A DNA stretch of 64,000 nucleotides, taken from assembly GCF_001447785.1 (NCBI RefSeq), contig NW_015172030.1, positions 512,856 through 576,855 on the forward strand, written 5' to 3'. The translations under genes and the position numbers were made by a program. Each line of letters begins with the position of its first letter. Position 1 is the first letter of the stretch. This document shows, piece after piece, positions 1 through 55,549 of the stretch. This DNA comes from Gekko japonicus. Taxonomy: Eukaryota. The notes under the pieces are model-generated. The model was not told where the DNA came from. It saw only the letters and a list, made by a program, of their open reading frames with translations, and did not search any database.

Positions 1-865
1 CGGTCCGGCTTGAACCAGATGATGTAGCACTTGGGCAGGTAGAGGCACGCCAACAGTCCCAAAGTGCACAGCAAAATGGCGGCCATTTGCACGGCAGGCT
101 GGTACTCTTGCTTCACGGAGGTGTAGGTGGGGATGAAGAAGACCAAGGCGATGAAGTATGCAATCATGGTGAAGGTGATGCCCCGTGCAACGTTGTACTT
201 CTTGGCTGGCATCTGCACCATGAAGGTGCAGAGGAAAGAGGTAAACGCCAGGATGCCATTGTACCCATGGATCAGGGCAAAGGCGGGCCAAGATTCAATC
301 TTGCACTGGATGAGAACTTGGGTCGGCAAAAGAGCGTAGTTGCGGACCACGACCGGTGGGACGTCGTAGACAAACCAATAGCAGAAGAGACTTTCCGCTA
401 GGAGGCAGGAGGCCACGATGGACCAGGGCTGCTTCTGGATGAGGGTGTGCAGGAAGGTGCGCCGGCTGTTGGCGAAGTCATGCACCAGGACAATCTGGAA
501 TGCTTTCACCAATATGGTGGAGAAGCAGACATTGAGGCAGAGGGCGAAGAAAGGCTGGCTGAGCTTGCAGATGGTGGGGCTGGGCTTCCCGATGTGAAGG
601 CTGGTGCTGACGCACATCATGGCAAGGGAGGAGAGGGCCAAGAGGCTCATGGCGCCCCCGGCGGCTTGCACCACGGGGGTATGGAGGTTCTTCAGGAACA
701 GCGCCCCCGTCAGGCAGGTGAGAGCCAAAGCTAAGAACAACAGGCCCAGCAAGATCAAGGACAGGGGTTCTAACCAGAAGAGGTACTTCTCACTGCGGTC
801 ATAACACCGCGTGCTGCGCTTGGGAGACCACTGGTGCTCAGGGCAGGGAGTGCAGGCCGAGTCCT
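1..865 (-). CDS. TAS1R3: TAS1R3 exon 6 (end of cysteine-rich domain plus 7TM), partial; runs off the window
   Basis: ttccacag acceptor; CTPCPEHQWSPKRSTRC...FLKNLHTPVVQAAGG...YNVARGITFTM...YLPKCYIIW; frame open to position 1. Confidence 0.92.
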
Positions 866-1026
866 CTGTGGAAGAACAGCAAGAAACACCTGCCTCAACT
901 GGGCACTTGTCTGCAAACAGATTATTCTGCAGCCTGGTCGACAGCTCATTTTTAACCAGGGAGCCCTAGGGCTTCCAAGCAGTGCCTGACTCTGGCGGGA
1001 GCATTGTGGGGGACCACTACTAGAGC

Positions 1027-1335: not shown

Positions 1336-2647
1336 ACTAGAGCTATCTTTGTCACTTCCAGATCACTCTAGGAATCACCGGGAACTCTATGGTTAGAACG
1401 TCCTGTAAGTAACTGAGGCCTTATTTTTCTTTTTTTAAAAGCTTTTCTCCCCAGGATGATTGCCCCCCTCCCCGCCTGGACCCCCGTTTCCACCCGCCAA
1501 TCAGCTGAGCAGCGGCCAGTGAGGGCTACAGTTGGCTGGAGGTCTCCCGCCACAAGTGGGCAAATGGGAACTCTAGGACAGGGGTGTGAGACATAAGACC
1601 TGGGGCCGGGAACCGGCCCGTCCAGGGCTCTTATGCAACCCGCAAGCAACTAGTGCAAGGGAGGGAACAGGAGACTGCTTGGGAGGGGAGTAGGCGGAGC
1701 CTCTCCGATGATGGCTTCAGCATGGCGGAACAACCTCGTCTGCAGCAGTCGAGCAACGTGGGAGCGTCTGCCCAGTGCTGCACCGCCAGGTCTCCGGTCC
1801 ACCCATGTGGGTTTTCCTTTGCACACCCCCCCCTCAGCCCATGGGGCCTTGCAGTGAGGATGCACCAACTCGGAGCTTACTAGCTGCTGTCCTTTGTACA
1901 GTTTACATCTCCGGTACTTGGCATGACGTTTTATGGCACACATGGCCGGGTCTGACAAAGTGACACTTATGTCAGATCCGGCCCTCGTAACAAATGAGTT
2001 TGACACCTCAGCTCAAGGAAATGAGCAAGAGCCAACGACATTGGCACCACCCACTGATTTGGAGCCAAGAGACAAGAAAATGGTGCTCGGTTGGGCTGGG
2101 CTTTCCAACTCTGGGTTGGGAAATTCCTAGAGATTTGGGGGGTGGAACCTGGGGAGGGTGGAATTTGGGGAGGGGAGAGGTGGAACCTGGGGAGGGTATG
2201 CATTGCCTAGGGTTGCCCAGTCTGGGTTGGAAAACACCTAGAGACCTTGGGGGCGGAGCCAGGAGAGGGCAGGGTTTGGGGAGGGGCCTCAGCATGGTGT
2301 ACCATGCCATAGAGTCCACCCTTCAAAGCAGCCATTTTCTCCAGGGGAGCTGATCTCTGTCAGCTGGAGATCAGTTGTAAAAGCGGGCGATCCCCAGGCC
2401 CCACCTGGAGGCTGGCAACCCTAGGTATGCCATAGAGTCCACCACCTGGAACAGCCGTTTCCTCCAGGGGAACTGATCTCAGTCGTCTGGTGATCGGTTG
2501 TAATTCCGGGACATCTCCAGCTACCCCTGGAGACTGGCAACCCTAAATTGGGATTAGTTACCTCTGCCAGACTCTGGGCTTTGGAAGGTGCCCGATCAAT
2601 GCATTTCTGATGCAGGGCGGCTGTTTTAAGGCCCTGAACGTGCTTAC

Positions 2648-2768
2648 CTCTACTGCTGCAGAATGTCCCCTTCTCGCAGTCAATGCAGTCGTAACAGCAC
2701 AGGTGAAAACCTTTCATCCGGCGGATCTGCCCAGGTTGGCACGTGGTAAGGCACTGGGACGTAGGCTT
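2648..2768 (-). CDS. TAS1R3: TAS1R3 exon 5 (cysteine-rich domain)
   Basis: [36 protein letters not shown]; 121 nt; GAG|GTAAG donor. Confidence 0.93.
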
Positions 2769-5134: not shown

Positions 5135-5482
5135 GGAGCTGCGGTGGCTCAAGTGGTTAAGACACTGAACTGCAGGCTGTGGAAGGTCAGTAGTTCAGTA
5201 GTTCGAGACCCGAGTTGCCACATGATGGAGTGAGCTCCCGTCTCTAGTTCCAGCTCCTGCCAACCTAGCAGTTCGAAAGCAAGAAATTGCAAGCAGATAA
5301 ATAGGTACCACTCCGGTGGGAAGGGAACAGCGTTCCGTGCGCCTTGGTGTTTAGTCATGCCGGCCACATGACCACGGAAATGTCTTCGGACAGCGCTGGC
5401 TCTTCGGCTTTGAAACGGAGATGAGCACCGCAACCCTAGAGTCGGACTCGACTGGCTTTCGAGCAAGGGAACCTTTACCTTT
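5135..5482 (+). mobile_element. Sauria SINE
   Basis: Same family, opposite orientation to 4391-4730. Confidence 0.8.
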
Positions 5483-5607
5483 TTATGACTCCTTTCTAGT
5501 AGGATATAACTAGGATATAAACAAGATGCGCTGATCGGCGAGGTGAGGAATTTTTGTGGACGTAAGTTGGGGAAGAAGGAGAAACTGACTACCTTCTCCG
5601 TTTTTAC

Positions 5608-5811
5608 CTGTTGATTTTCGGTATGAAAAAGAAGCAGGGATTTGTTGATGTTCAGTTTCCCATTGAATTCTCCAAGGGTGGTGTACTTGATCTGGCCGTC
5701 CTTCCAGCTCCACCCAATGACCTCGTAGCCCTTGTTGATGCTGCGGTATCGGTCAAACTGGAACGACTGGTTTCTGGTGCTGAAATTGAGGGTCTTCATT
5801 TCTTCCAGCAG
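5608..5811 (-). CDS. TAS1R3: TAS1R3 exon 4
   Basis: tttctgcag acceptor; LLEEMKTLNF...FHTENQQ; CAG|GTAAAA donor; 204 nt, phase 0-0. Confidence 0.9.
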
Positions 5812-7933
5812 CTGCAGAAATGGAGAGGGAGGCGGTGGACGGAGACCCCGCGGTTCCACCTCCCAATTTTACCTCCCAGCGAACGAAACTACACCCAATA
5901 TCCCAACAAAGATCTCTGGCCTGTGCCGGCCCCTTCTCTGGGAGCTGTGCTAGATCTGGAATCATGCAGAATGCTGCACTGCAGGCATCCCCAGGCTTTT
6001 CGAGCCTGCAGGCAACTCCGGACTGCTGTCACAGTGCGGCGGGCGCAGCCACAAAACAGCTGCTGCAGGTGGGCTTGCCAGACCCCCCAGTTTGGCGGGG
6101 GTTGCCCGATTTGGAGGGGCTTCCTTCCACCCGGCCTCCTCTCCACTTCTTCCCAACAGTGTTTAAATACATCTGCTGGGGAGAGGTGGGGGCCTGGGCG
6201 CCTGCACTCCGAGCCCTGAATTTGGGGCTTGGAGTGCAGGCACATGCGGCTTCCTCACCCACCTCTCCCCAGCAGCGTTTAAAAGAAGGCTTTCAATGCT
6301 GCTGGGGAGAGGCAGGTCTGGGCACCCACCACCACCTCTTCCCAGCAGGGTTTAAAAAGACCCTTTAAATGTTGCTGGGGAGAGGTTGGAGTTTCCACTC
6401 CCGAATGTGATGACGTCATTTCTGAGTGATGTCATGACGCTGGGGACTCCCCACCCCCTCCAGTAACACCCCCCAAAGTCCCCCGCTGGGGTCTTTGGGG
6501 GCACCTGCCAACCCTAGCTGTGGAACATGGAGCCAGCCACAAAATGGCCGCCTCAGCTTACCTTCAGTCACGCAGTGAAGATCCTTGGGCTGTGGTGGCA
6601 GCTGCTGGCAAAGGCAACGTGTTTTTTTTTTAAAAAAAAATCAAATGTCCAATGGCCAATCAGAAGCCTTGCTGGGCAAAAGCTCCAGGTGGCCCCGCCC
6701 GCTTTCTAAAAACACAAATATTTTGTGTTGCAGAGATTGAGGAGGAGAGGAAAAAAAGTGCTTCCGGCTCCCTTCCACTTGCCAGGAGCCATTTTTAATG
6801 CACCGAGAGGTCTGCTGGCTATTTGTCCGCTTCTTCCCCTATTCTCATTTTTGTACCTTAACTTTTTGGTCTGGCAGGACTGAAAAGATTAAGAGTTAAG
6901 AAAAGATGAAGGTGGGAGACAAAGCCCTTGCTTCCTTTTCTCTGTGTTTTATCTTATATTAATCAAATATATCTGTTGTGTTTCCCAGTGCTTCTAATGA
7001 TATACACTTTGGTGTAGTGGTTAGGGCCGTGGACTCTAATCTGGGAGAACCGGGTTTGGTTCCCCACTCCTCCACATGCAGCAGCTGGCATGACCTTGGG
7101 TCAGTCTCTCACGGTTCTCTCACAGCTGTTCTGGACAGAGCAGTTTCTGTCAAGAGCTCTCTCATCCCCACCTACCTCACAGGGTATCTGTTAGGAGGGG
7201 AAGGGAAAGGAGATTGTAAGCCGTTCTGTGACTCCTTCAGGTAGTGAAGGGTGGGGGTATAAACCCAATTTCTTCTTCTCTTCTTCTTCTTATTGACCAG
7301 AGTGGGGCAGAAGAAGGAAGCAATGAGTACTGCCAACCTCCAGGTGCTGCCGGGAGATCTTCCAGAATTATAACTCAGAGGTCATTTGGGGGGAATTGCA
7401 GGGGATCGCAGTTCCCCCGGGTGAGGTACGGGGGGGGGCGGGGCACATGATGAAGCCCCACCCCCTGCTTCCGGCCGCCCCGCTTCCGGCCCTCATTCAG
7501 CCAGGAGGAGGCAGGAGAAGAGGGAGGGTAAGTTGCTTCCTCCCTGCCTCTCCCCACCCCTGCCTGCCTGCCTGGGGCCAGGGAGGGCCTTCGCGGGGCT
7601 TCCTTGCACTCCCGCCGGCCTTGCACGTCCACCGCCGGGCCCCTGCTCTTTTTCTACGAAACGACCCCTGTTATAACTGATCTCCAGACTACAGAGTCAG
7701 TCCCTCTGAAGAAAATGGCTGCTTTGGAGGGTGGACTGGATGTCATTATACCCCACTGAAGTCCTCAAATCCCGCCCTCCTCAGGCTCCACCCCCACATC
7801 TCCAGGAATTTCCCAATCTGGAGTTAGCAACCCTAGAATTAGCAGGTACGTCCCATCGCTGAAAGGACATAGGTGGATTGGCTCCAGCCTGTTTCCCACT
7901 TTGAAGAGGGCCCCCTCACCTTTGTTCTCTCAC

Positions 7934-9139
7934 CTGCCAAGGTTTGACACTGCTCTTGTTACACCGCCCGCTTTCACAACCCAGCGCGTTGTGGAGCGCA
8001 TGGGCCACGCTGTAGACAGCCGTGTACACAGCAAAAGTCTGCCGATGCTCCAGCACCCCTTTGATGGTCTCTAGGGAAGCCTGGTCACATTGCGGGCACT
8101 GTGAACCCAGGACATCCGAGCCCGCCTCATTGGCTTCCTTCTGGGAAGCCTCACAGAAACTCCTCTGTTGGCACAGCTCAAAGAGTCTGATGGCATACTC
8201 GTGGAAGCTGGAAACGTTTCCGGCCTTGATGATGAAACCGATGACTGTCCCAATAGAGTCCACTCGCCCAAGGGAGGTGACCACGTCAGACATCACCCAC
8301 GCTTCGGTGGCCAGCCATACCTTCTTGCCCAGTCCTAGCCGGAGACACTCTTTGAAGAGAGCCCGGACGGTTCGGTCATTGGAAAAAAGGACGATGACGT
8401 TGACGTTGGTTTTGTTGACCGACTCAATGGTCGACACCAACGTCTTGTCAAAATCAGGGCTCAATACGTCTGCCGGGATCAGCCCCTCGTAGTTCTCCAG
8501 GGAAACCTGGTCACATTGCGGGCACTGCGACCCCAGGACGTCCGAGCCCACCTCATTGGCTTCCTTCTGGGAAGCCTCGCAGAAACTCTTCTGTTGGCTC
8601 AGCTCAAAGAGTCTGATGGCGTACTCGTGAAAGCTGGAGACGTTTCCGGCCTTGATGATGAAACCAATGACTGTCCCAATAGAGTCCACTCGCCCGAGGG
8701 AGGTGACCACGTCAGACATCACCCACGCTTCGGTGGCCAGCCATACCTTCTTGCCCAGTCCTAGCCGGAGACACTCTTTGAAGAGAGCCCGGACGGTTCG
8801 GTCGTTGGAGAAAAGGACGATGACGTTGACGTTGGTTTTGTTGACCGACTCAATGGTCGACACCAACGTCTTGTCAAAATCAGGGCTCAGTACGTCTGCC
8901 GGGATCAGCCCCTCGTAGGCGACGCAGATGCTTTTGCTGACCGCCATGGAAGACAGGAGGCTGAGGCCTTCTCGGCCGTATTCGTCATCGCTGCCTATGA
9001 CTGCGATCCAGTTCCACTTGAAAGAGGTCAGGAGTTCCACCATGGCGTCCAGTTGGATCTTGTCGCTGGGCACAGTGCGGAAGAAAGAGGGGTACATCTC
9101 CTCGCTGTTCAGCTTCTGTGACGTGGCACCATAGCTGAT
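7934..9139 (-). CDS. TAS1R3: TAS1R3 exon 3 (1206 nt, including a 426-nt in-frame tandem duplication)
   Basis: ISYGA...YPSFFRTVPSD...WNWIAVIGSDDEYG...CPQCD...VYSVAHALH...KPWQ; ccag acceptor and CAG|GTGAG donor. Confidence 0.92.
8067..8918 (-). repeat. Direct tandem duplication, 2 x 426 nt, within TAS1R3 exon 3
   Basis: Copies at 8493-8918 and 8067-8492, ~96% identical. Confidence 0.97.
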
Positions 9140-10147
9140 CTGGAGGGACATAAGTGGTGGTCACATTGACAGTCCATTTCTACCCAACCCTTTTGCCGGT
9201 TTCAGAGGGAAGATGTGTTGGTCTGCCGTAGGGGAGCTAGATTCGAATGCCATGGCATCTTAGAGACCAACAAGATTTTCGGGGTACGAACTTTTGAGGG
9301 TCAAAGCAGACGAAGAGAGCTTTGACCCTCGAAAGCACGTACCCCCAAAAAAATCTTGCTACTGGACTCGAATCTAACTTTTTTGTCCGTTTGCTTGGAA
9401 ACCTTTGGATCAATGGGGCAGGGGAAGGGACGATTTTAAATAAACGAAACAAGCAATTTGCCGTGTTCGAGCACAAAAGTTGTGGGACAAATCTTGGAAG
9501 TTTGGTGCAAACTGTCACGGAATGATAGAATCACAGACGGGGGCATAGCCAGAAAATTTTGAGTGGTGGGGCATTGGGAAATCTGGGGGGCAGGGGAGTG
9601 GGAGAGAGAGAGAGAGAGAGAGAGATCCCATTGGCAGGCAGGTGAAGAAGAGAAGGGTCTTTCCTTACCTGCTGGCACAACTCCCATAGCGGGAATTGTG
9701 GGGCGTGGGCCATGAATGAAGGGGCACCGCCCCTAAATGCCCCACTGTGGCTACGGACTGATCACAGAGCTGGCAGGGGCCACACAGGCCACCCAGTCCA
9801 ACCCCCTGCTCAATGCAGGATCAGCCTATAGCATCCCTGACAAGGGTTTGTCCAGCCGCTGCTTGAAGACTGCCAGTGAGGGGGAGCTCACCACCTCCCG
9901 AGGCAGCTGATGCCACTGTTGAAAAACTCCTATTGTCAAAAAGTTTTTCCTGAGATCCAGCCGGTCCCTTCCCGCCCTTCATTTAAACCCATTCTTGCGA
10001 GTCCTCTCCTCTGCTGCCAACAGGAACAGCTCCCTGCCCTCCTCTAAGTGACAGCCCTTCAAATATCCTACTACCCTTCAGGTGACAGTTCTTGGCAAAA
10101 AGCAGTCTTTCTTCCCCCCCCCCCCCCCCCTATTAAATATGAAATAG

Positions 10148-10413
10148 GTGTAGTGGTTAAGTGCGCGGACTAATCTGGGAGAACCGGGTTTGATTCCCCA
10201 CTCCTCCACTTGCACCTGCTGATGTGACCTTGGGTCAGTCACAAGCTCTGGCACAGCTGTCCTTGAAAAAGAGCAGTTTCTGTCAGAGCTCTCTCAGCCC
10301 CACCCACCTCACAGGGTGTCTGTTGTGGGGAGGGGAAGGGAAAGGAGTTTGTAAGCCGCTCTGAGACTCCAAGTGAAGGGCGGGGTATAAATCCAATATC
10401 TTCTTCTTCTTCT
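10148..10413 (+). mobile_element. tRNA-derived SINE (Squam3-like); other copies at ~7008-7290, 17608-17841, 35951-36225, 39667-39910, 56633-57360, 60368-60772, 62325-62599, 63471-63742
   Basis: A/B-box head ggtgtagtggttaag...ggtttgattcccc; shared body; (TTC)n tail. Family name tentative. Confidence 0.65.
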
Positions 10414-10726
10414 TAAAGATATGGATTCTATCTGTTGGGTTCCAGTCTAGTGTTCTATCTGTATGTCTAAAAAAGTCTGCTGGGACAGCACAGGTAGAAA
10501 TGCCCAGATGACCCAGCAGAGAGAAGTTCGACTCCCGTGTCCCATAACTAGAAAAATTAAAGTTTTAAATAGAGCGGGGATCACTGGGGGAGTGGGAGAG
10601 GGGAGGTAGCTGTGAATGTCCTGCATTGCGCATAGGGTTGGACTAGATGACCCTTGTGGGTCCCTTCCAGCTCTACGTTTCTATCAAGAGAACTTTCTAA
10701 TATGGCGCTTTACAAAAAAAAATGAC

Positions 10727-11027
10727 CTGCGGGATCAGGAAGAAGCTAAAGAGCTTAGCAGTAACGGTGCAGAGCTGAGAGCTGTGCGGCCCTATGACCG
10801 CCAGCACCCGGGGCTGGTAGTCGGTGTAGTTGCAGAGGACTCCGATTCTGTTGCTGCCTGTCCTGGTGAGGAACAGGAGGCTGGGCTGGAGGGCGACGAT
10901 CGGCTCCGAGCAGTCGTCGTAGATGTTGTAGCCCAGCTTGATCCCTGGCAGCAGCGTTGTGGAGTTGTTGATTTCCTCCACGGCAAACTTCATCCCCAGA
11001 GCCCAGACGAGACCTGTGGCATAAAGC
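10727..11027 (-). CDS. TAS1R3: TAS1R3 exon 2
   Basis: ttttcccctgcag acceptor; [30 protein letters not shown]...[19 protein letters not shown]...FSFFLIPQ, typical of T1R3; 301 nt. Confidence 0.93.
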
Positions 11028-11107
11028 CTGCAGGGGAAAAGGGGAGGGGAGGTGTGAGGATTCGGGACATTAAAATAGCTGCCCTGGATCAGACCGAGGT
11101 CTATCTA

Positions 11108-11720: not shown

Positions 11721-12465
11721 GGCACTTTAGAAGCATCTGCTATTCCAGGTACATTGTCTGTGATTGTGGAGGTTCCACTCTGATGGGGAGGGGGCTGTGG
11801 CCCAAGTGGTCGAGCAGAAGGGTCCCAGGCTCTGCAGGTGAAAGGACCAGGTGGTAGGGGATGTGAAGGGAGACCCCGGAGAGCGGCTGCGACTCTGCGT
11901 GGACCATACTGACCTGGGTGGACCACGGTCTGATTCAGTAGAAGGCAGCTTCATGCACATTCATGGCTAACAGCTACTGACAGTCCTGCCTAATAGTGAC
12001 GTATTTACTCTTTGATAAGGACACAATTGTTGCTTTGCTGGTCCCAGATCAAGGTCCCTGCACCCTCTTTCTAGCATAAAGAGACGGGCACATGTGTTTG
12101 TGGGGCTTTGGGCACCCCCTCCTCCCATTCTCTGACTCCCCTTTCCACCTCCCTCAGTGCTGCTCCACCATAGTAGCAATCTCCCAGCGGATGAGAGGGT
12201 AACTCAGCAGAATATGGTGCTCCCTATGCTCTTGTGTTCACTCTCCCTATGCTCTTGTGTCAGCCATTGGTGGTATGTAGGACCATGAGCCTCAGTAGAT
12301 GCCTGGCTGTGCCAACCCACATCCTAACAGCACCCACTTGGGAAGGACGTAAAAAGGAGCTTGAAAGCATCCACCTTTCCTTCTGCAGAGCATCTGTGCC
12401 CGGAGGTATTTGGCTTTCTTGCCGCAGCGTTACCTTTGGGGGCTCACCTTCGATTCCCTCCTTAC

Positions 12466-12644
12466 CTCTCGCACATGTAAACATCCGGCAACGTCCGGTC
12501 CATTGCACTGGTGGTGAGGACTCGTAAAGGGAACAATCCACCCAGCAGATAGTCTCCGGGTTTTCTAAACTGGGAAGAGATGCAGCGCTCTTCCCGGGCC
12601 AGGGTCCAGCCCAAACCGATACCGAGCACAAGGAAAGCGGCCAT
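12466..12644 (-). CDS. TAS1R3: Taste receptor type 1 member 3, exon 1 (signal peptide, start of Venus flytrap domain)
   Basis: ATG at 12644 gives MAAFLVLGIGLGWTLA...PGDYLLGGLFP (class C GPCR N-terminal motif); AG|GTAAG donor; phase matches exon 2. Confidence 0.9.
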
Positions 12645-14040
12645 GGCCCTTGAACGGTTCCAACAGCAATCTTTGCCTCCTAGTTTTGGAGTCGGATGCG
12701 GCAACGGCAGGCAGGGAAGACTCTCAAAACGCAAGGTGTCACCTCCTCAACATTTATTTTTTTATTAACTTGAGTTATAGATGGCCAAGGAGGGGAAACG
12801 TCCCAAAAGGATTTGTTTAGCAAAGTACGTTGTGTGCGGGATCATGCATCTGCGGGGGGAGGCTTAGTCATCCATGCTAAGCAAATGTCCAATGGGGCTA
12901 GTCAGGGTTGCTCTTTTGCAAACCGCTGGCCCAAATCTTTGCCGTTTCCTCATCGAGCGCTTTTGACATTGGCTTGGAAAGGGCAAGAGGTTTTGCTTTC
13001 TCCAGCCCGGGGTCATAGTGATGGTTCTTTTTGCTTTAAGCGCAACACAATGCATGACGGTGGACTCTTTTTCTCGCCTGCTGGCACACAGGGGACCAGA
13101 AAGAGGTGTGTGTGTATTAGGTACCATCAAATTGCTTCCGACTTCTGGTGACCCTATGAATCAAGGCAGAGGTCATTTCGGGGGGGGATCGCGGGGGATC
13201 ACAGTCCCCCCCGGTGAGGTACGGGGGCGGGGCACATGATGAAGCCCCACCCCCTGCTTCCGGCTGCCCCGCTTCCGGCCCTCATTCAGCCAGGAGGAGG
13301 CAGGAGAAGAGGGAGGGTAAGTTGCTTCCTCCCTGCCTCTCCCCACCCCTGCCTGCCTGGGGCCAGGGAGGGCCTTCGCGAGGCTTCCTTGCACTCCCGC
13401 CGGCCTTGCAGGTCCACCGCCGGGCCCCTCATGGGGCTCAGCAGTGGAGCTGCAAGGCCAGCGGCGGTGGCCGGGACCGTTGGGAGCGGGGTGTGTGGCC
13501 TTATGACACACTTCCGGTGATGTCAGGGGGTGTGGCCTTATGACACACTTCCGGTGATGTCAGGGGGTGTGGCATATGCTAATGAATTATGCTAATGAGT
13601 TCCCCTAGCTCTTTTTCTACGAAACGACCCCTGAATCAAGGACCTCCAAAGCATCCTATCATTAACTGCCTTGCTCAAGTCTTGCAAACCGAAGGCCGCA
13701 GCTTCCTTGATTGAGTCAATCCATCTCATGTTGATAGATCAAGACGGGCAGCTGTGTTCGTCTGTCTGGAGCAGGAGAAAAGCACAAGAGTCCAGCAGCA
13801 ACCGAAAGACTAACAAGATTTGTGTCCAGGCAACATTCTGACAGTGTATTTTGGGGGTCCCCAACTGTGTTAGCTATGCTACAATGTGCTTAGAGACTGG
13901 GATGCATCTGATAGAGACGAGGGCATGGCTACTAACCTTAAAGTGTTGGCTGTGCCTACACTTTAGGGCTGAACCTGCTAGCTATATCCATATGATGCTA
14001 GCTGATTCTTTTGTTTCCAACTGGTGTAGTCAGATCCAGA

Positions 14041-18787: not shown

Positions 18788-20525
18788 AGCTTTTAAGGGC
18801 AGGAGGCAGACAGCGTGTGTATCTGCTTCCGAGGGGGTAGCTGCCCTTCATTGGGACATGCAATTGGGGCAGGGTCACCCCCCAGCTGTTTATGGACCCT
18901 GCCTTGACTGTGGAGTGGACAACTTTTCGCTACCACCATTGCGCTTTTCGGCACTGAAAAATCCACAACGCTGCTCCCGGTGCAGAGAGAGTATTTATTT
19001 CAACCCAACTGATAGATATAGAATCTTCAATACAATCCCGGTACAAGCATTCAGTCTGCAGGACTGCAGTGCAAATATTTCCAGCGTGGACAGCTTACAC
19101 AGACATGAGACAGACAGAAACCCGTGACAGTACGGTGAACACTTTGATTGGCTTGAAAATAAAGAGAGAATCTGGCACGACAGACACGTCGTGAAAAACA
19201 TCCCTTATACAGAACACCTTAGATTGTCTAGAGCAGGGGTCCCCAACGTGGCGCCCACCCTCGTCGACACCTCTCCTGGGGTGTCCCAAGTGCTTTTAGA
19301 ACGTGGGTGAGGCTAGGTGGGACCTTTTCCCAGCAGGGCTTCCGCTTGGCTATGCAGATTAAAAGGCATCCTGTTAAACAGCCCATCTGCCCGAAACGTT
19401 GACGTTCCTATTAGAGTTGTATATAACCTGGATCCATGTTATTTTGTGGTTGGCTCCACCTCCTGCGGTAGCCATTTTGTGACTACCCCCACCTCCTGCG
19501 GCAGCCATTTTGTGATTGGCTCCACCTCCTGCGGCAGCCATTTTGTGTTTGTACCCACCGCCCTTTGTCAGAATTCCAAAGGTGCCCACAAACACCAAAG
19601 GTTAGGGACCCCTTGTCTAAAGGCCTGACCAACAGCCTTGCGTAGAAACATCCTGAAATGTTACAGCATAGTTAAAAAATTTTTTAAGCATTTCCTAACA
19701 GAAAAGTCTTGGTACGAGAGAGCGAAGATGGTTCAATAGCAGATAAGCAGAACTCCAAACAGACCCTGCTGTAGCTACTAGGGCACTGATCCAGGGAGAG
19801 TCAGGCATGCTTACAGATTGCAATTCAGGGCCTGCTTACCTGGGAGTAATCCCCACTGAATAAAGTAGGCGTCCCTTCTGTGTAAACATGCACAGGCTTG
19901 TGCGGTTTTGTTCCAGCGACTGGGGGACAAGTTAGCAGCGAGTCCGACCAGCTAACTTTAACGGGAACAAAGTGTGGCTATTTCTGGACCTGGGGCTACG
20001 GGGAATGAAAGGTTCTGGCAGAAAAACTCTTAAATACTTTGAAAGTTGCCTTCTTCGCTGCTTTGAGCAATAGAAAAGCTGGATGATTTTAACAAGAAGA
20101 CTACCTTTTTAAAGCAGCTTCTAATTCAGGAAAAGGCAAGCACAGGATAGCGCCACTCCCTCGGACAAGGAATGAGAGTAGAGGCAGAGGAAGGAAGAGT
20201 CAAGGATGGTGATAAGCAAGAAGAGCTACGAGCCAGAAGGGGGAGGGGGGAAGCAGATAGACTGAACACCAGAAAGGCTGCCGATAAAGCAGCAGAAACG
20301 ATGAACGGTGCTCTTTTACACAGACTGACAACTGCCCATCAGGCGTCAGATATTCTCAAGCAGTCAGGTGTGGGTTCTTTGAGGGCACTGTGCCTTTCCA
20401 TTCGTTTCCGCTAACTAGGAGGGCCGCCGCTACGGGACCTGTTCCCGATTTGGCCGCTGAACGCTGAGGTTAGTCCCTCGAGTCTTCTTTCTGCCGTTTG
20501 GCTCTGTGTTTTTTTGGTTTTGTAT

Positions 20526-20819
20526 TGACCGTGCAGCTATTTTTCTCAGTAATGAGTTCGTAGCACTGCTGCAGAGACCTGTTAGTTTTAATCAAACTGG
20601 GCGACAGCGGCCTTGAGTTCTATGCAGAGGCAGGTCGGTAGCATTTAAAGAAACAGCAGCTCGTAATCTGGTTTTGTTTTGACCGTGCAGCTATTGTTCT
20701 TAGTAATGAGTTCGTAGCACTGCTGCACAGACCTGTTAGTTTTGATCAAACTGGGCGACAGCGGCCTCGAGTTCTATGCAGAGGCAGGTCGGTAGCATTT
20801 AAAGAAACGGCAGCTCGTA
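20526..20819 (+). repeat. Local tandem duplication, ~154-bp period
   Basis: tgaccgtgcagctatt...gcagctcgta occurs twice. Confidence 0.85.
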
Positions 20820-27899: not shown

Positions 27900-29165
27900 G
27901 GTTAAGAACATAAGAACAAAACAGAAGCCATGTTGGATCAGGCCAATGGCCCATCCAGTCCAACACTCTGTGTCACACAGGGGTCCAGTCCCAGGTGCCA
28001 TCAGGAGGTTCGCCAGTGGGGCCAGAACTTCAGAAGCCCCTCCCACTGTTGCCCCCCAAGCACCAAGAGGACAGAGCATCACTGCCCCAGACTGAGAGTT
28101 CCTATCTTTACCTTGTGGCTAACAGCCACTGATGGACTTCTGCACCCCCTCCCACTGTTGCCCCTCAAGCACCAAGAAGACAGAGCATCACTGCCCCAGA
28201 CGGAAAGTTCCTATCTTTACCTTGTGGCTAACAGCCACTGATGGACTTCTGCTCCCAATGTTTCTTCAATCCCCACTTGAAGCTGTCTAGGCTTGTAGCC
28301 ACAAACCACTTCCTGCAGCAGTGAATTTGACGTGTTAATTACTCTTTGGGTGACAAAGTACTTCCTTTTATCTGTTCTAAACCTACTGCTCATTAATTTC
28401 ATTGAGCGCCCACGAGTTCTTGTATTGTGTGAAAAGTACTTCTTTTATTACCTTCTCTATCCCATGCATAATTTTGTAAACCTCTATCATGTCACCCCTC
28501 AGTCATCGTTTCTCCAAGCTAAAAAGCCCTAACCTCTTTAACCTTTCTTCATCGGGAAAGTGGACCTCCTGATGGCACTGGTATTTCTGGCCACTGTGGG
28601 ATACAGAGTGTTGAACTGGATGGGCCTTTGGCCTGATCCAACATTGGCATCTCTTATGTTCTTAAAGTGTTCCACCCCCTTAGTCATTTTAGTTGCCCTT
28701 TTTCGAATACCACAATATCTTTTTTGAGGTGCAGTGACCAGAACTGTACAGAGTATTTCAGATGCGGCCACATGCACCATCAGTTTCTACTGATTTGTTT
28801 TCCTTTCCCTCCCTAATAATCCCCGGCAAAGCATTTGCCCTTTTTATTGCCGGCACACACTGAGTCAACATTTTCAGTGAGTTATCTACCACACGACTGC
28901 AAGATCTTGCTCCTGGTCAGCCTCTACCAGTTTGGACCCAGTCAACATGCATTTATAGTTAGGATTTTTAGCTTCAATATGCATTACATTGCACTTTCCC
29001 ATTTTGAACTGACGCCCACTCAGCCAGCCTCGACAATTCCCTCTGGAGCACCTCACAATTCTCCCCGGTTCTCACCACCCTGAACAATTTAGTGTCATCT
29101 GCAAACTCAGCCACTTCACTGCTTACTTCCGTCACCAAATCATTAATGAACAAGTTAAAAAGCAC
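27900..29165 (-). mobile_element. CR1 LINE 3' fragments
   Basis: LFNLFINDL...FADDTKL reverse-transcriptase motif; RFRTDKRKYF..QRVIN C-terminus. Confidence 0.8.
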
Positions 29166-30384: not shown

Positions 30385-31000
30385 NNNNNNNNNNNNNNNN
30401 NNNNNNNNNNNNNNNNNNNNNNNNNNNNNNNNNNNNNNNNNNNNNNNNNNNNNNNNNNNNNNNNNNNNNNNNNNNNNNNNNNNNNNNNNNNNNNNNNNNN
30501 NNNNNNNNNNNNNNNNNNNNNNNNNNNNNNNNNNNNNNNNNNNNNNNNNNNNNNNNNNNNNNNNNNNNNNNNNNNNNNNNNNNNNNNNNNNNNNNNNNNN
30601 NNNNNNNNNNNNNNNNNNNNNNNNNNNNNNNNNNNNNNNNNNNNNNNNNNNNNNNNNNNNNNNNNNNNNNNNNNNNNNNNNNNNNNNNNNNNNNNNNNNN
30701 NNNNNNNNNNNNNNNNNNNNNNNNNNNNNNNNNNNNNNNNNNNNNNNNNNNNNNNNNNNNNNNNNNNNNNNNNNNNNNNNNNNNNNNNNNNNNNNNNNNN
30801 NNNNNNNNNNNNNNNNNNNNNNNNNNNNNNNNNNNNNNNNNNNNNNNNNNNNNNNNNNNNNNNNNNNNNNNNNNNNNNNNNNNNNNNNNNNNNNNNNNNN
30901 NNNNNNNNNNNNNNNNNNNNNNNNNNNNNNNNNNNNNNNNNNNNNNNNNNNNNNNNNNNNNNNNNNNNNNNNNNNNNNNNNNNNNNNNNNNNNNNNNNNN
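30385..31000. other. Assembly gap (616 N)
   Basis: Run of N. Confidence 1.
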
Positions 31001-33121: not shown

Positions 33122-35367
33122 GTAAGCCACGTGAACATTCGTGCCTGTTTCACGCTCTTTATGTTGGAGACAGGTGGGGGTATGTTCTTGAAAAGTGTGG
33201 TCTTTCATAATAAGAACATAGAATCATAGAATGTTAGAGTTGTAAGGGACCCCTTGCAGGTCATCTAGTCCAGCCCCCTGCACTCTGCAGGAGCATAGCC
33301 GAAAGATAGCCCTACAACATACCCGAAAGATGGTCGTCCAGCCTCCACTTGAAAACGTCCAGTGAAGGAGCATCCTCCACCTCCCGAGGCAGTCTGTTCC
33401 ACTGCTCAACCACTCTTACAGTTAGGACGTTTCTCCAGTCTGTTCCACTGCTCAACCACTCTTGCCGTTAGGAGGTCTCTCCTGGTATATAACCGGTAAT
33501 GACTCCCTTGTAATTTCCACCCATTAGATCTAGTCTTGCAATCCGGAGCAAGAGAGAGAATAGAACTGCTCCATCTTCTACATGACAGCCCATCAAATAC
33601 TTGAAGACGGCAATCATGTCCCCTCTAAGCCTTCTCTTTCCCAGGCTAAACATAAGGAGAGCCCATCCAGTCAGGCATTCTGTCTCACACAGTGGCCATC
33701 CAGCTCTTCTGGAGGGCCTATAACAGGGCATAGGGGCTGAGGCCTTCCCCTGATGTTGCCTCCTGGCTCTGTACAGGGTTCCATCAGCGGCTATTAGCCA
33801 CAAGGTATAGATAGGAACTCTCGGTCTGGGGCAAGGGATGCTCCGTATTCTTGGTGCTTGGGGGGGGGGCAGTTCCGTAGTTCCAGCAGTTCCGTAGAGC
33901 CGTGAAAATGGAGCTGTTTCGCCAAGCGTTCCAATAAGAACTGACTGCACTGGTTGGGTCGCACTAGCACTTCATTATAGGACGCCGCTGTATTTATTTA
34001 GCTTCACTGTATTTATTGAGCGGTCGGGTTAGAATGGATAAAGGGAAGTACTTCTTCACCCAAAGAGTGATTCACACTTGGAATTCACTGCCACAGGAAG
34101 TGGTGGTGGCTACAAACATGGACGGCTTCAAAAGGGAATTAGATAAGCATATGGAGCAGAGGTCCATCAGTGGCTATGAGCCACAAGGTATAGATAGGGA
34201 CTCTGGGGCAAGTGATGCTCTGTCTTCTTGGTGCTTGGGGCGGTCAACAGTGGGAGGGCTTCTAATGTCCTGGCCCCACTGGTGGACCTCCTGATGGCAT
34301 GTGGTATTTTTGGCCATTGTGTGACAGTGTTGGACTGGATGGGCCTTTGGCCTGATCCAACATTGGAATCTCTTATGTTCGTATTGGAATTGTATTTTAT
34401 ATCTCGTAATTGCTGATTTTAAATTGTATGTTGGTTTTAAATTGTTTGTAAGCCGCCCTGAGCCGCTTCGGCGGGAGGGCAGAGTAGAAATTTAATAAAT
34501 AAATGAATAAATAAATAAAGTGGGAGGGCTCCTAGTGTCCTGGCCCCACTGATGGACCTCCTGAGGGCACCCGGTATTTTTGGCCACTGTGTGACACAGA
34601 GTGTTGGACTGGATGGGCCATTGGCCTGATCCCACATTGGCTTCTGTTGTTATGTATGAAAGGCAAATATTCAGACAGCAGCATTCCATAGTACGGATAA
34701 ATGTGTTTAACTTGTTTGACAGGCCCCATTGGGGAAGTAGTATGCTTTTGTCATGTTTCCAGCCACAGTTTATATCATCCCCTCCAATGTTTCACAAATC
34801 AAAATAGGGACGTGCTTGTACACGATTGCCCTCTTTAAGTGTTTGAAAGGCTGTCTCTTAGAGGAAGGCGAGGAGCTGTTCCTGTTGGCAGCAGAGGACA
34901 GGATTTGCAACAATGGCTTTAAATTATGGGAGGAAAAGGTACTGGCTGGATAGCACAAAGAATTTTTTACAGTAAGAGTAGTTTTGCAGTGGAATCGGCT
35001 GCCCAGGGAGGTGGTGAGCACCCCCTCCCTGGCAGTCTTCAAGCAGCGGCTGGACGAACACTGGTCAGGGATGCTCTAGGCTGATCCTGCATTGAGCAGG
35101 GGGTTGGTCTAGATGGCCTGTAGGGTCCCAACTCTGTGATTATGTGATCTGTGTTGCTGGTCTATTCATCCTGCTCTCCTTCCACTGTTGCGTGCCGCCG
35201 AAGGAACTTTGAGATCAGTCCTATTTCTTTTCTCACCAATAGTCCGTCCTGCACTTTTAACAGTCAAGCAGGAGGGAGTCCTTTTCTCTTATCCGAGTGT
35301 ACCTTGAACCAATTTTCTGACTATTGTCCACAGTTCAGGATAAGGTGTGGTGTGAAAAGCAGTATGT

Positions 35368-35890
35368 ACAAAGACAAATATGGTCACAGTCCATAGACAT
35401 GAAAATAGACCCTGTGGCTCTATCTTTTCATGTGGTGTGAAAAGCGGCAAGAGCACGCACTGCATTTCCACATGGGCATGTGTTTATGTGCCAGTGTGCC
35501 AAAAAGAAGGTGTGTTCATTCTCCAGTGCAGAGATTTAAATGGGAAGGAATGTGATCCCTGTCTGTTGGCTGTAGCAACTGACATGAACGAGGGAGGGGC
35601 TGTGGCTCAGTGGAAGAGTGCTTCACAAAGACAAATATGGTCACAGTCCATAGTCATGAAAGTAGACCTGTGGCTCTGTCTTTTCATGTGGTGTGAAAAG
35701 CGGCAGGAGCATGCACTGCATTTCCACAAAACCCTTTCATGGGCATGTGTTTATGTGCCAGTGTGCCAAAAAGAAGGTGTGTTCATTCTCCAGTGCAGAG
35801 ATTTAAATGGGAAGGAATGTGATCCCTGTCTGTTGGCCGTAGCAGCTGACATGAACGAGGGAGGGGCTGTGGCTCAGTGGAAGAGTGCTT
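35368..35890 (+). repeat. Local tandem duplication, ~256-bp period
   Basis: acaaagacaaatatggtcacagtccatag...tggaagagtgcttc occurs twice. Confidence 0.85.
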
Positions 35891-36552
35891 CGTATGCAGA
35901 AGGTCCCAAGTTCAATCCATGGCATCTCCAGTTAAAAAAAGGACCATGCAGAGCCAGTTTGGTGTAGTGGTTAAGTGCGCGGACTCTAATCTGGGAGAAC
36001 CAGGTTTGATTCCCCACTCCTCCACTTGCACCTGCTGATGTGACCTTGGGTCAGTCACAAGCTCTGGCACAGCTGTCCTTGAAAAAGAGCAGTTTCTGTC
36101 AGAGCTCTCTCAGCCCCACCCACCTCACAGGGTGTCTGTTGTGGGGAGGGGAAGGGAGAGGAGTTTGTAAGCTGCTCTGAGACTCCAAGTGAAGGGCGGG
36201 GTATAAATCCGATCTCTTCTTCTTCATTATGTGAAGGACCTCTGCAGTCTGAGTAGATAACACTGACCCTGATGGACCGATGTTCTGGTTCCATTTAAGG
36301 CAGTTTCACGTGTGTTTCTGTGTAAAAATGGACCTTCAGGTGAGGAAAATGCAGAAATCGGGCCAGTGACTTAATAGGGGAAACAACCAAAAACCCTTTT
36401 AGATGGGAACAGATGGAGGATAGGCTATATTGAGATTTGAAGCATATGAGTCAGTTTGAAGGTTACATTTCACACAGTTGAGCATTTCGGAAACAGCGTG
36501 GCAGCCGCATGAGGATTTCAAGCAACTCACTTAATGTTCTTTGACCTTTCAG

Positions 36553-49324: not shown

Positions 49325-49621
49325 GTAAGCAAAAGGAGAGGGCGGGGGCAGAATTGTGAGTTCCGTGTGAACGCTTGAGCCCGCGCTAACAGGCTTTCCT
49401 CGGGCATGGGTTCGGACAACCGGTTCTGGCCCATTAGGAAGTCTCCAATGGAGCAGGTTTGTTCCCAGGGCCAGACCTGCCTCCTCTTTTTCCCCTCCCT
49501 CCCACCCTGTGTGGAAAGTGCCGTGAAGCTGCAGCTCCAAGGAAATGTCAGGTTTCCAAGGCAAGAGACATTGGTCCTTTCCGCACTAGAACTTAAATCC
49601 TGGTGCAACCCTGTCCCTGAA

Positions 49622-52293
49622 TTTACATTCTACACTACACGCAAGTTCACCCCTGTAATTACCTCGGGGTATTTTTACATTCTACACTACACGCGAGTTC
49701 ACCCCGGTAATTACCTCAGGGTATTTTTACATTCTACACTACACGCGAGTTCACCCCGGTAATTACCTCGGGGTATTTTTACATTCTACACTACACGCGA
49801 GTTCACCCCGGTAATTACCTCGGGGTATTTTTACATTCTACACTACACGCGAGTTCACCCCGGTAATTACCTCGGGGTATTTTTACATTCTACACTACAC
49901 GCGAGTTCACCCCGGTAATTACCTCGGGGTATTTTTACATTCTACACTACACGCGAGTTCACCCCGGTAATTACCTCGGGGTATTTTTACATTCTACACT
50001 ACACGCGAGTTCACCCCGGTAATTACCTCGGGGTATTTTTACATTCTACACTACACGCGAGTTCACCCCGGTAATTACCTCGGGGTATTTTTACATTCTA
50101 CACTACACGCGAGTTCACCCCGGTAATTACCTCGGGGTATTTTTACATTCTACACTACACGCGAGTTCACCCCGGTAATTACCTCGGGGTATTTTTACAT
50201 TCTACACTACACGCGAGTTCACCCCGGTAATTACCTCGGGGTATTTTTACATTCTACACTACACGCGAGTTCACCCCGGTAATTACCTCGGGGTATTTTT
50301 ACATTCTACACTACACGCGAGTTCACCCCGGTAATTACCTCGGGGTATTTTTACATTCTACACTACACGCGAGTTCACCCCGGTAATTACCTCGGGGTAT
50401 TTTTACATTCTACACTACACGCGAGTTCACCCCGGTAATTACCTCGGGGTATTTTTACATTCTACACTACACGCGAGTTCACCCCGGTAATTACCTCGGG
50501 GTATTTTTACATTCTACACTACACGCGAGTTCACCCCGGTAATTACCTCGGGGTATTTTTACATTCTACACTACACGCGAGTTCACCCCGGTAATTACCT
50601 CGGGGTATTTTTACATTCTACACTACACGCGAGTTCACCCCGGTAATTACCTCGGGGTATTTTTACATTCTACACTACACGCGAGTTCACCCCGGTAATT
50701 ACCTCGGGGTATTTTTACATTCTACACTACACGCGAGTTCACCCCGGTAATTACCTCGGGGTATTTTTACATTCTACACTACACGCGAGTTCACCCCGGT
50801 AATTACCTCGGGGTATTTTTACATTCTACACTACACGCGAGTTCACCCCGGTAATTACCTCGGGGTATTTTTACATTCTACACTACACGCGAGTTCACCC
50901 CGGTAATTACCTCGGGGTATTTTTACATTCTACACTACACGCGAGTTCACCCCGGTAATTACCTCGGGGTATTTTTACATTCTACACTACACGCGAGTTC
51001 ACCCCGGTAATTACCTCGGGGTATTTTTACATTCTACACTACACGCGAGTTCACCCCGGTAATTACCTCGGGGTATTTTTACATTCTACACTACACGCGA
51101 GTTCACCCCGGTAATTACCTCGGGGTATTTTTACATTCTACACTACACGCGAGTTCACCCCGGTAATTACCTCGGGGTATTTTTACATTCTACACTACAC
51201 GCGAGTTCACCCCGGTAATTACCTCGGGGTATTTTTACATTCTACACTACACGCGAGTTCACCCCGGTAATTACCTCGGGGTATTTTTACATTCTACACT
51301 ACACGCGAGTTCACCCCGGTAATTACCTCGGGGTATTTTTACATTCTACACTACACGCGAGTTCACCCCGGTAATTACCTCGGGGTATTTTTACATTCTA
51401 CACTACACGCGAGTTCACCCCGGTAATTACCTCGGGGTATTTTTACATTCTACACTACACGCGAGTTCACCCCGGTAATTACCTCGGGGTATTTTTACAT
51501 TCTACACTACACGCGAGTTCACCCCGGTAATTACCTCGGGGTATTTTTACATTCTACACTACACGCGAGTTCACCCCGGTAATTACCTCGGGGTATTTTT
51601 ACATTCTACACTACACGCGAGTTCACCCCGGTAATTACCTCGGGGTATTTTTACATTCTACACTACACGCGAGTTCACCCCGGTAATTACCTCGGGGTAT
51701 TTTTACATTCTACACTACACGCGAGTTCACCCCGGTAATTACCTCGGGGTATTTTTACATTCTACACTACACGCGAGTTCACCCCGGTAATTACCTCGGG
51801 GTATTTTTACATTCTACACTACACGCGAGTTCACCCCGGTAATTACCTCGGGGTATTTTTACATTCTACACTACACGCGAGTTCACCCCGGTAATTACCT
51901 CGGGGTATTTTTACATTCTACACTACACGCGAGTTCACCCCGGTAATTACCTCGGGGTATTTTTACATTCTACACTACACGCGAGTTCACCCCGGTAATT
52001 ACCTCGGGGTATTTTTACATTCTACACTACACGCGAGTTCACCCCGGTAATTACCTCGGGGTATTTTTACATTCTACACTACACGCGAGTTCACCCCGGT
52101 AATTACCTCGGGGTATTTTTACATTCTACACTACACGCGAGTTCACCCCGGTAATTACCTCGGGGTATTTTTACATTCTACACTACACGCGAGTTCACCC
52201 CGGTAATTACCTCGGGGTATTTTTACATTCTACACTACACGCGAGTTCACCCCGGTAATTACCTCGGGGTATTTTTACATTCTACACTACACG
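49622..52293. repeat. Tandem array, 52-bp unit x ~51 copies, near-perfect
   Basis: Unit acattctacactacacgcgagttcaccccggtaattacctcggggtattttt; period 52 from 49625 to 52277. Confidence 0.98.
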
Positions 52294-54427: not shown

Positions 54428-54734
54428 TGGGCTTACCAAGTACTTACCGAGAATCGGTGGGGGACACATACGGTACTTCTTCTCAGGGCCGTTCCCGCGT
54501 GGAAAACAGACGCGCCGCACCATGCCGTCGCCAGGAAGTGACGCCGGGTGACACTCTGGCAATGGGGCTGGAAACTCGATGGTATTATCGAGTTTCCAGC
54601 CCCATTGCCAGAGCGTCGCCCAGCGTCACTTCCTGGCGATGGCATGGTGCGGCATTGGTGTGTTACAGGGAGGAATGTTCCGGCTGGGGACCACGTGTCC
54701 CTTGCCGATTCGCGGTAGGTACTTGGTAACCCTA
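54428..54734. mobile_element. hAT-like palindromic MITE
   Basis: Inverted ends gggcttaccaagtac / gtacttggtaaccc; 8-bp TSD gtgacagc. Confidence 0.7.
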
Positions 54735-55549
54735 GTGACAGCCCTTCAAGTGCTTGAAGATGGCTATCATCTCATCTCTCAGTCGTCTCGGCAAGGCCCC
54801 CCCCCCAAAGTGGTTCCACCCACTTTCAGAAAACACTTGGCAGGTGCCAGGTAAGGTGTCAGCGGGGCAGCCATGGGAACGACAGTGGAGGACCCCCCCC
54901 CCGGTCTAATCCTTTAAAAAAGAGCCATAAGAGAACATAAGAGAAACCAGCATTGGATCAGGCCAGTGGCCCATCCAGTCCAGCACTCTGTCACAGTGGC
55001 CAAAAATACCGGGTGCCATCAGGAGGTCCAGCAGTGGGGCCAGGACACTAGGAGCCCCCCCACTGTTGCCCCCCCCCAAGCACCAATAATACAGTGCATC
55101 CCTTGCCCCAGACCAAGAGTCCCTATCTATACCTTGTGGCTCATAGCCACCGATGGACCTCTGCTCCATCTGTTTATCCAGTTCCCTCTTGAAGCCATCC
55201 AGGCTTGTAGCCGCCACCACCCCCTGTGGCAGTGAATTCCATGCGTCAATCACTCTTTGGGTGAAGAAGGACTTCCTTTTATCTGTTCTAAGAGTTTAGC
55301 CGTGTGGAGCCAGTTCCAGGAAAGAGAGCTCACGCGGCACCTTTTGGGTAACGGGTTTATTAAGACTAACACCACAATAAATCTGTTAGCATTCAAGCTA
55401 CGATGCTTTAAAAGGGGGGGGGGAGCAATTTGTGCTTTTCGGCCACCACCGCAGTCTCGCAGCACCGGATTCTGAACGAAGGGGGGGGGAGGAATGCTTG
55501 ATGTGTTTCAAAGAGTGCTTTCTTCTCTCTTTTTGGTCTCCGCCTCCAG

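What the first reader, a model, noticed from the sequence alone, without database searches (positions are those of the whole stretch)
8067..8918. In-frame 142-aa tandem duplication inside the TAS1R3 Venus-flytrap domain, with mostly synonymous divergence
Seen in sequence: exon 3 is 1206 nt and contains two adjacent 426-nt copies (YEGLIPAD...CPQCDQVSLEN and YEGLIPAD...CPQCDQASLET), with no frameshift or stop. By hand I count ~18 differences: ~13 synonymous and ~5 non-synonymous (S/C, K/R, V/A, V/A, N/T), concentrated in the 3' third of the unit. Established: removing one copy leaves 780 nt, close to the usual T1R3 exon 3. The segment covers much of lobe 2, the EAW ligand-pocket region and the T1R CPQC loop. 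Inference: ~4% divergence with a synonymous excess is high for two alleles. This could be a selected, structurally novel sweet/umami receptor subunit with an extra lobe, a recombinant of two diverged TAS1R3 copies, or a mis-join of haplotypes or paralogs in a gapped assembly.
Basis: partly seen in the sequence, partly recalled or inferred. Interest (0 to 1): 0.8.

Follow-up and report, generated by a model that had tools for sequence, protein, structure and literature searches.

The report
False exon duplication in gecko TAS1R3
The doubled 142-residue stretch in this lizard sweet/umami taste receptor gene is in the assembly, but other animals of the species carry it once, so it is most likely two alleles placed in tandem by the assembler.

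Summary
Exon 3 of TAS1R3 (minus strand, 7934-9139, 1206 nt, open, AG/GT) contains two adjacent 426-nt units: U1 at 8067-8492 and U2 at 8493-8918. They differ by 18 substitutions and no indels (13 synonymous, 5 non-synonymous; dN/dS about 0.11).

The headline reading, a selected receptor with an extra lobe, does not hold. I laid public contigs of three conspecific samples and one related species on the junction. None lies on the U1-tail to U2-head joint. All begin to fit at 8492 and carry 123-268 unlike letters to the left.

In sample X1, a full-depth 1050-nt contig has exactly the length of window 7807-9282 minus one unit. That gives a normal 780-nt exon. Sample X3 holds both a U1-type and a U2-type head at equal depth. 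Neither is preceded by a unit tail, so they behave as two alleles of a single-copy exon.

Most likely (about 0.88) the assembled animal was heterozygous and the short-read assembler placed both haplotypes in tandem, a heterotype false duplication. The synonymous excess is ordinary allelic divergence under purifying selection. The scan had no earlier follow-up of this stretch.

The parts
7934..9139 (-). TAS1R3 exon 3 as assembled (1206 nt; 780 nt if one unit is removed)
   Evidence: Open frame with AG acceptor and GT donor. PDB best hit is T1R3 at E = 1.8e-91. Pfam ANF_receptor at 6.8e-55.
8067..8492 (-). Unit U1, the 3' copy in the gene's direction. Its variant-rich head is 8067-8270. I read it as haplotype a of the assembled animal.
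   Evidence: A U1-type head contig in X3 (record 18) shows 9 differences, which are exactly the 9 U1/U2 differences within 8494-8609. Its 51 letters to the left are unlike a unit tail. No U1 letters appear in X1 or X2.
8493..8918 (-). Unit U2, the 5' copy in the gene's direction. I read it as haplotype b of the assembled animal.
   Evidence: The U2-type head appears with 0 differences in X1, X2 and X3. G at 8804, 8810 and 8890 is private to the assembly; all four runs read A there, which is the U1 state.
8492..8493 (.). Junction between U1 tail and U2 head. No laid record supports it.
   Evidence: Depth is 0 in bins 8420-8481 in all four runs. Every contig begins to fit at 8492 (or 8494 for the U1-type one) with 51-268 unlike letters to the left. 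8066 and 8492 are both g, which explains a start at 8492 if the left part is the true left flank.
7662..7836 (.). Interspersed repeat in intron 3 that sets the left end of the X1 and X2 contigs
   Evidence: Four other full-length copies and one 76-nt partial copy in the window, at 74-80% identity, all ending at 7830-7836. 7837 - 30 = 7807, which gives the observed 259-letter left part.
9253..9310 (.). High-copy repeat in intron 2 that sets the right end of the contigs
   Evidence: Summed contig depth rises to 231,298 at 9257-9287. Contigs end at 9282, about 30 letters into the repeat.
10700..11104 (-). Open stretch holding TAS1R3 exon 2
   Evidence: PDB T1R3 at 1.3e-43, chain residues 68-174. 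ANF_receptor.
12465..12746 (-). Open stretch holding TAS1R3 exon 1 (signal peptide and start of the flytrap domain)
   Evidence: PDB T1R3 at 4.3e-05, chain residues 27-66.
5152..5868 (-). Open stretch holding TAS1R3 exon 4
   Evidence: PDB T1R3 at 3.3e-06, chain residues 426-494.
2424..2768 (-). Open stretch holding TAS1R3 exon 5 (cysteine-rich domain)
   Evidence: Pfam NCD3G at 2.1e-10.
3..965 (-). TAS1R3 exon 6 (seven-helix domain); the open frame still runs at the window start
   Evidence: Pfam 7tm_3 at 2.9e-50. PDB T1R3 at 1.4e-67.

Best explanation
The duplication is a heterotype false duplication made by the assembler, not a feature of the gene. The real exon 3 has one 426-nt unit and is 780 nt long, the usual T1R3 size. 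The species carries at least two alleles of this exon that differ strongly over about 200 nt. The assembled animal was heterozygous. Its two versions of the interval between the first and last heterozygous sites were laid head to tail: flank, allele a, allele b, flank. The frame stays open only because 426 is a multiple of 3. The excess of synonymous changes reflects ordinary purifying selection on two alleles of a working single-copy gene. Shown: the single-copy structure in four other samples, and both head types as separate single-copy forms. Inferred: that the reference animal was heterozygous, and how the assembler joined the two.
For: Read evidence:
- No contig of X1, X2, X3 (organism A, two studies) or X5 (organism B) lies on 8420-8491. 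All start to fit at 8492 with 123-268 unlike letters on the left.
- X1's contig is 1050 nt at depth 82, similar to its neighbours (62-81). Window 7807-9282 minus 426 is 1050, and the 259-letter left part equals 7807-8065. That start lies k-1 = 30 letters inside the repeat ending at 7836. The adjacency of left flank to U2-type head, which the assembly does not contain, therefore exists in reads.
- X3 has a U2-type head contig (0 differences, depth 4.3) and a U1-type head contig (9 of 9 diagnostic differences, depth 4.2). Neither is preceded by a unit tail.
- X1 and X2 show no U1-type letters, so U1 is not a fixed second copy.
- The single-copy form in X1, X2 and X3 is U2 head plus U1-state tail (A at 8804, 8810, 8890). 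Unequal crossing-over within a U1-U2 array cannot produce that form.

Supporting points:
- The unit starts exactly at a variable site (chance 18/426 = 0.04).
- The 15:3 transition bias and absence of indels show real alleles rather than read errors.
- Heterotype false duplications, including false exon gains, are documented as common in older assemblies (PMC9516828).
Its paper reports Illumina reads assembled with SOAPdenovo and SSPACE (PMC4673495). I did not verify the species.
Against:
- All four runs are contigs, which show presence rather than absence and give no local depth.
- There is no N gap at or near the junction; the only N run is 30385-31000. Ko et al. list a gap between copies as a usual mark of false duplication.
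- I did not see the letters of the contigs' left parts. That they are the left flank rests on length arithmetic and on the start at 8492.
- A simple de Bruijn bubble would duplicate only the variant-dense 204 nt, not the whole 426 nt. The exact assembler step is therefore unexplained.
Confidence: 0.88

Rival explanations
1. A real but rare tandem duplication allele carried by the reference animal. It would have formed in a U1/U2 heterozygote by non-homologous exchange or template switching between homologues. It would encode a T1R3 with 142 extra residues in the flytrap domain, probably non-functional.
For: The assembly shows it without a gap, in frame and without indels. The reference animal's reads were not examined. 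X2's contig over the unit has about half the depth of its flanks (46.6 against 83.5-96.2), so a second, unassembled haplotype exists in at least one animal.
Against: It needs an inter-homologue event with only 1 nt of shared sequence at the breakpoints. Both units exist as plain single-copy alleles, so an artefact needs no extra event. The unit begins exactly at a variable site. None of four runs shows the junction.
Confidence: 0.07
2. A fixed, old and selected in-frame duplication: a structurally novel sweet/umami receptor subunit.
For: The frame is open, dN/dS is 0.11 and dS is 0.14 between the units.
Against: X1 carries a full-depth contig that goes from the left flank into a single unit and on to the right flank, 426 nt shorter than the window. 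X1 and X2 lack U1-type letters. Organism B also has one unit. The duplicated piece (human T1R3 residues about 245-387) is not a self-contained folding unit of the bilobed domain; this last point is inference from the known flytrap topology.
Confidence: 0.01
3. A mis-join of paralogues: U1 comes from a second TAS1R3-like locus elsewhere in the genome.
For: The two heads differ by 15 of 204 nt (7.4%; dS 0.23 over the codon-aligned 204 nt). That is about as much as organism B differs from U2 (70 of 782).
Against: A fixed paralogue would appear as contigs in the deep DNA runs X1 and X2, yet no U1-type letters are listed there at 90% likeness. In X3 the two forms have equal depth (4.2 and 4.3). The window holds no other TAS1R3-like copy.
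Confidence: 0.03

Closest known systems
Heterotype false duplication / false exon gain in genome assemblies (Ko et al. 2022, PMC9516828; Rhie et al. 2021, PMC8081667)
   Same: Two diverged haplotypes of one locus are both kept in a haploid assembly, on the same scaffold, inside a gene, at a spot of locally high heterozygosity. Each copy carries haplotype-specific letters.
   Different: There is no gap between the copies. The block is small (426 nt), lies inside one exon and happens to be in frame. Half depth in the source animal was not tested.
TAS1R3 (T1R3), the shared subunit of vertebrate sweet and umami receptors
   Same: All six exon regions hit T1R3 best. The domain order is flytrap, cysteine-rich, seven-helix. 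The exon 3 length is normal once one unit is removed.
   Different: Nothing beyond the assembly error. Two strongly diverged alleles over about 200 nt of exon 3 are unusual but not a structural novelty.
True intragenic tandem duplications (exon-internal, in-frame)
   Same: Head-to-tail units, an open frame and little breakpoint homology.
   Different: A true new duplication starts with identical copies. Here both copies pre-exist as single-copy alleles, and the junction is absent in four runs.

Membership tests
TAS1R3 (class C GPCR) | Venus-flytrap (ANF_receptor) domain, nine-cysteine domain and 7tm_3 domain in that order | tested here: met
   ANF_receptor in exons 2 and 3, NCD3G in exon 5, 7tm_3 in exon 6.
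TAS1R3 (class C GPCR) | Closer to T1R3 than to T1R1, T1R2 or CaSR | tested here: met
   Exon 3: T1R3 1.8e-91, T1R1 3e-44, T1R2 4e-40, CaSR 3e-34. Exon 6: T1R3 1.4e-67, CaSR 8e-43. Exon 2: T1R3 1.3e-43, T1R2 1e-17.
TAS1R3 (class C GPCR) | Conserved neighbourhood (DVL1 / CPTP / INTS11 side) | not tested
   First-stage notes place INTS11 at 49325-55549. I did not check this.
Heterotype false duplication | Each copy corresponds to one haplotype of a single-copy locus | tested here: met
   The U2-type head follows the left flank directly in X1, X2 and X3. A U1-type head contig in X3 is likewise not preceded by a unit tail.
Heterotype false duplication | Junction between copies absent from reads | tested here: met
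   No record lies on 8420-8491 in four runs, and X1's contig is the window minus 426 nt. These are independent animals, not the source animal.
Heterotype false duplication | Half read depth over each copy in the source animal | not testable with these tools
Heterotype false duplication | Gap between the duplicated pair | tested here: not met
   The only N run is 30385-31000.
True tandem duplication fixed in the species | Both units and their junction present in every animal | tested here: not met
   X1 is single copy at full depth, and X1 and X2 have no U1-type letters.

The most novel reading that the evidence does not exclude
The reference animal really carries a private or rare in-frame 426-nt tandem duplication allele of TAS1R3. 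It would have been built from two diverged alleles by an inter-homologue non-homologous event, and it would segregate alongside normal single-copy alleles.
Probability: 0.07. Interest if true: 0.4.

Novelty: not a real feature. Interest (0 to 1): 0.08.

Why it matters
If taken at face value, the duplication would suggest a lizard sweet/umami receptor with an extra piece of ligand-binding lobe. It would enter gene models as a T1R3 with 142 extra residues. Showing that it is an assembly error protects comparative work on taste receptors; for example, TAS1R surveys of reptiles draw on draft assemblies of this kind (PMC6110252). It also warns that other in-frame tandem exon duplications noted in this genome need read-level checks before being believed. 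The one biological residue is two strongly diverged TAS1R3 alleles over about 200 nt of the flytrap domain.

Tried and rejected
1. Looked for a common edge signature in the window's other two-copy tandem duplications (first base variable, last difference 28 nt from the end). They do not share it, so I make no claim about assembler k-mer size.
2. Considered deletion by unequal crossing-over from a duplicated ancestor as the source of the single-copy form. Rejected: the single-copy form has a U2 head with a U1-state tail, the order such a deletion cannot give.
3. Considered sequencing error as the source of the differences. Rejected because of the 15:3 transition bias, the absence of indels and recovery of both forms in X3.
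4. Did not lay the full repeat pair. Read laying turns away stretches with a long repeat, so I sent 8420-9330: 73 nt of U1 tail, all of U2 and the right flank. Direct comparison of depth over U1 was lost.
All protein searches were exon by exon, by reference. For the same reason the big protein searches were not used. Their length window would miss full-length T1R3 with a single-exon query, and the claim does not rest on absence of relatives.
6. No structure prediction was run, because the read evidence made it moot.

Full report
**What is in the window**

The gene lies on the minus strand. Exon 3 runs 9139 to 7934 and is 1206 nt. It is open in frame 0, preceded by AG and followed by GT. Inside it, Tandem Repeats Finder reports a 426-nt period with 2.0 copies, 96% matches and no indels at 8068-8918.

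I call the + strand units U1 (8067-8492) and U2 (8493-8918). They differ at 18 sites with no indels: 15 transitions and 3 transversions. Thirteen changes are synonymous and five are not. NG86 gives dN 0.016, dS 0.140 and a ratio of 0.11.

Fifteen of the 18 differences lie in + strand offsets 0-203 of the unit, which I call the head. Three lie in the tail, at offsets 311, 317 and 397 (p = 0.003).

**The gene is TAS1R3**

- Exon 3 hits T1R3 chains at E = 1.8e-91, against 3e-44 for T1R1, 4e-40 for T1R2 and 3e-34 for CaSR. It does so in two stretches that re-use chain residues 266-387.
- The other exon regions also hit T1R3 best: exon 2 (1.3e-43), exon 6 (1.4e-67), exon 4 (3.3e-06) and exon 1 (4.3e-05).
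- Pfam finds ANF_receptor, NCD3G and 7tm_3 in the expected order.

**The test: reads from other animals**

The look-up of sequencing runs listed DNA-type runs X1 and X2 of the window's species (organism A; shares 0.57 and 0.49). It also listed a small run X3 of the same species from another study (share 0.38, guessed to be RNA) and run X5 of a relative, organism B.

Read laying turns away stretches with a long repeat. I therefore sent 8420-9330, which holds 73 nt of U1 tail, the junction, all of U2 and the right flank. I set likeness to 90% so that U1-type sequence and the relative would also be laid.

The result is clear.

- No record in any of the four runs lies on 8420-8491.
- In each run the long contig begins to fit at 8492 and carries unlike letters to its left: 259 in X1 and X2, 268 in X5 and 123 in X3.
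- A start at 8492 rather than 8493 is what the true left flank predicts, because 8066 and 8492 are both g while 8065 and 8491 differ.

**The length arithmetic for X1**

I did not see the letters of the left parts, but their lengths identify them.

- The interspersed repeat in intron 3 ends at 7836.
- A k = 31 contig would begin 30 letters inside it, at 7807. From 7807 to 8065 is 259 letters.
- At the other end the contigs stop at 9282, about 30 letters into the high-copy repeat that begins near 9253.
- Window 7807-9282 is 1476 nt. Minus one unit it is 1050 nt, exactly the length of X1's contig.
- That contig has depth 82, similar to its neighbours (62-81). It differs from the window at only three sites.

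X1 is therefore, as far as contigs can show, homozygous for an exon 3 with a single unit of 780 nt. The adjacency of left flank to U2-type head does not exist anywhere in the assembly, so it must come from reads.

**U1 and U2 behave as alleles**

- X3 holds two head contigs. Record 17 is identical to U2 over 8492-8591 (depth 4.3).
- Record 18 has 9 differences over 8494-8609 (depth 4.2). Nine is exactly the number of U1/U2 differences in that span, and the two rows listed for X3 (8579, 8589) show the U1 letter.
- Both records carry left parts unlike a unit tail.
- X1 and X2 show no U1-type letters at all, so U1 is not a fixed second copy or a fixed paralogue.
- All four runs read A at 8804, 8810 and 8890, the U1 state. 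The three Gs in U2 are private to the assembly.
- The common single-copy form is therefore U2 head plus U1-state tail. Unequal crossing-over within a U1-U2 array could only give U1 head plus U2 tail, so the single-copy form is not a deletion derivative of a duplicated ancestor.
- Organism B differs from U2 at 70 of 782 sites and also has a single unit.

**Best explanation**

The reference animal was heterozygous for two diverged alleles, and the assembler laid both in tandem. This is the heterotype false duplication of Ko et al. 2022 and Rhie et al. 2021, who also describe false exon gains and find such errors most often in older assemblies (PMC9516828).

The synonymous excess needs no special selection on a longer protein. 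It is what two alleles of a constrained single-copy gene look like. The unit begins exactly at a variable site (8067/8493), which has a 4% chance for a random breakpoint and is expected if the block is the heterozygous interval.

An earlier follow-up in this scan names the genome as the Japanese gecko draft. The paper for that genome reports Illumina reads assembled with SOAPdenovo and SSPACE (PMC4673495). I did not verify the species myself. X1's 2,455 million contig letters are compatible with a genome of that size.

**What weakens this reading**

- I could not lay the reference animal's own reads, because the cap was one call.
- All four runs are contigs, which show presence and not absence.
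- No gap separates the copies, whereas Ko et al. list a gap as a usual mark.
- A plain de Bruijn bubble would duplicate only the dense 204-nt head. The step that carried the whole 426 nt is unexplained.
- X2's contig over the unit has about half the depth of its flanks (46.6 against 83.5-96.2). A second haplotype that the contigs dropped therefore exists there. I cannot say what it is.

For these reasons I leave about 7% for a real, rare duplication allele in the reference animal.

**Residual biology**

The two heads differ at 15 of 204 nt (dS 0.23, dN 0.03 over the codon-aligned 204 nt, which holds 14 of them). That is about as far apart as organism B is from U2.

Organism B shows the U1 letter at 8579, 8589 and 8666 and at the three tail sites. 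Rows for the other sites are not listed, and the table was truncated. Both alleles therefore carry derived changes.

A short, deeply diverged tract in the flytrap domain could be an old polymorphism, an introgressed piece or a conversion tract. It is unexplained.

X3's contigs stop at the exon edges. Record 19 ends at 9138/9139, and X3 has no depth in 9164-9225, where the DNA runs have it. This fits transcript-derived contigs expressing both alleles, but RNA origin is only the tool's guess.

**Verdict**

The novel-receptor reading is refuted for the species. The feature is most likely an assembly artefact.

Noticed in passing
window 20515-20819, 28037-28256, 33390-33482, 35368-35891, 60347-60641: Further tandem duplications of 2.0-2.1 copies (periods 154, 109, 46, 267 and 144 nt) at 4-9% divergence, mostly without indels. 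They may be more haplotype-in-tandem artefacts or real old duplications. They share no edge signature with the TAS1R3 case.
   Followed up: partly
window 49622-52293: An almost perfect 52-nt tandem array of 51 copies (99% matches). It lies inside the region where the first stage noted missing INTS11 exons. It is either a real minisatellite or an assembly or gap-filling product that replaced sequence.
   Followed up: no
window 56663-57165 and 61608-61992: Three-copy tandem arrays (periods 168 and 126 nt, 93-94% matches). The first is built from the SINE-like element also seen at 7036-7235 and 10170-10370.
   Followed up: no
window 8067-8270 versus 8493-8696: Two TAS1R3 alleles differ at 15 of 204 nt (dS 0.23 over the codon-aligned 204 nt). 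That is as much as the related organism B differs from one of them. Both are present in sample X3. This could be an old polymorphism, introgression or a conversion tract.
   Followed up: partly
window 9253-9310: A very high-copy element in intron 2, with summed contig depth up to 231,298 in X1. It has an inverted-repeat core (9276-9350 pairs with itself at 77%) and is also present in organism B.
   Followed up: no
run X2 over window 8492-8906: The contig over the unit has about half the depth of the flanking contigs (46.6 against 83.5-96.2). This animal carries a second haplotype that the contigs do not show.
   Followed up: no
window 7500-7644 versus 13289-13429: A 145-nt stretch in intron 3 recurs at 96% identity upstream of the exon 1 region; it is a young dispersed repeat or local duplication.
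   Followed up: no
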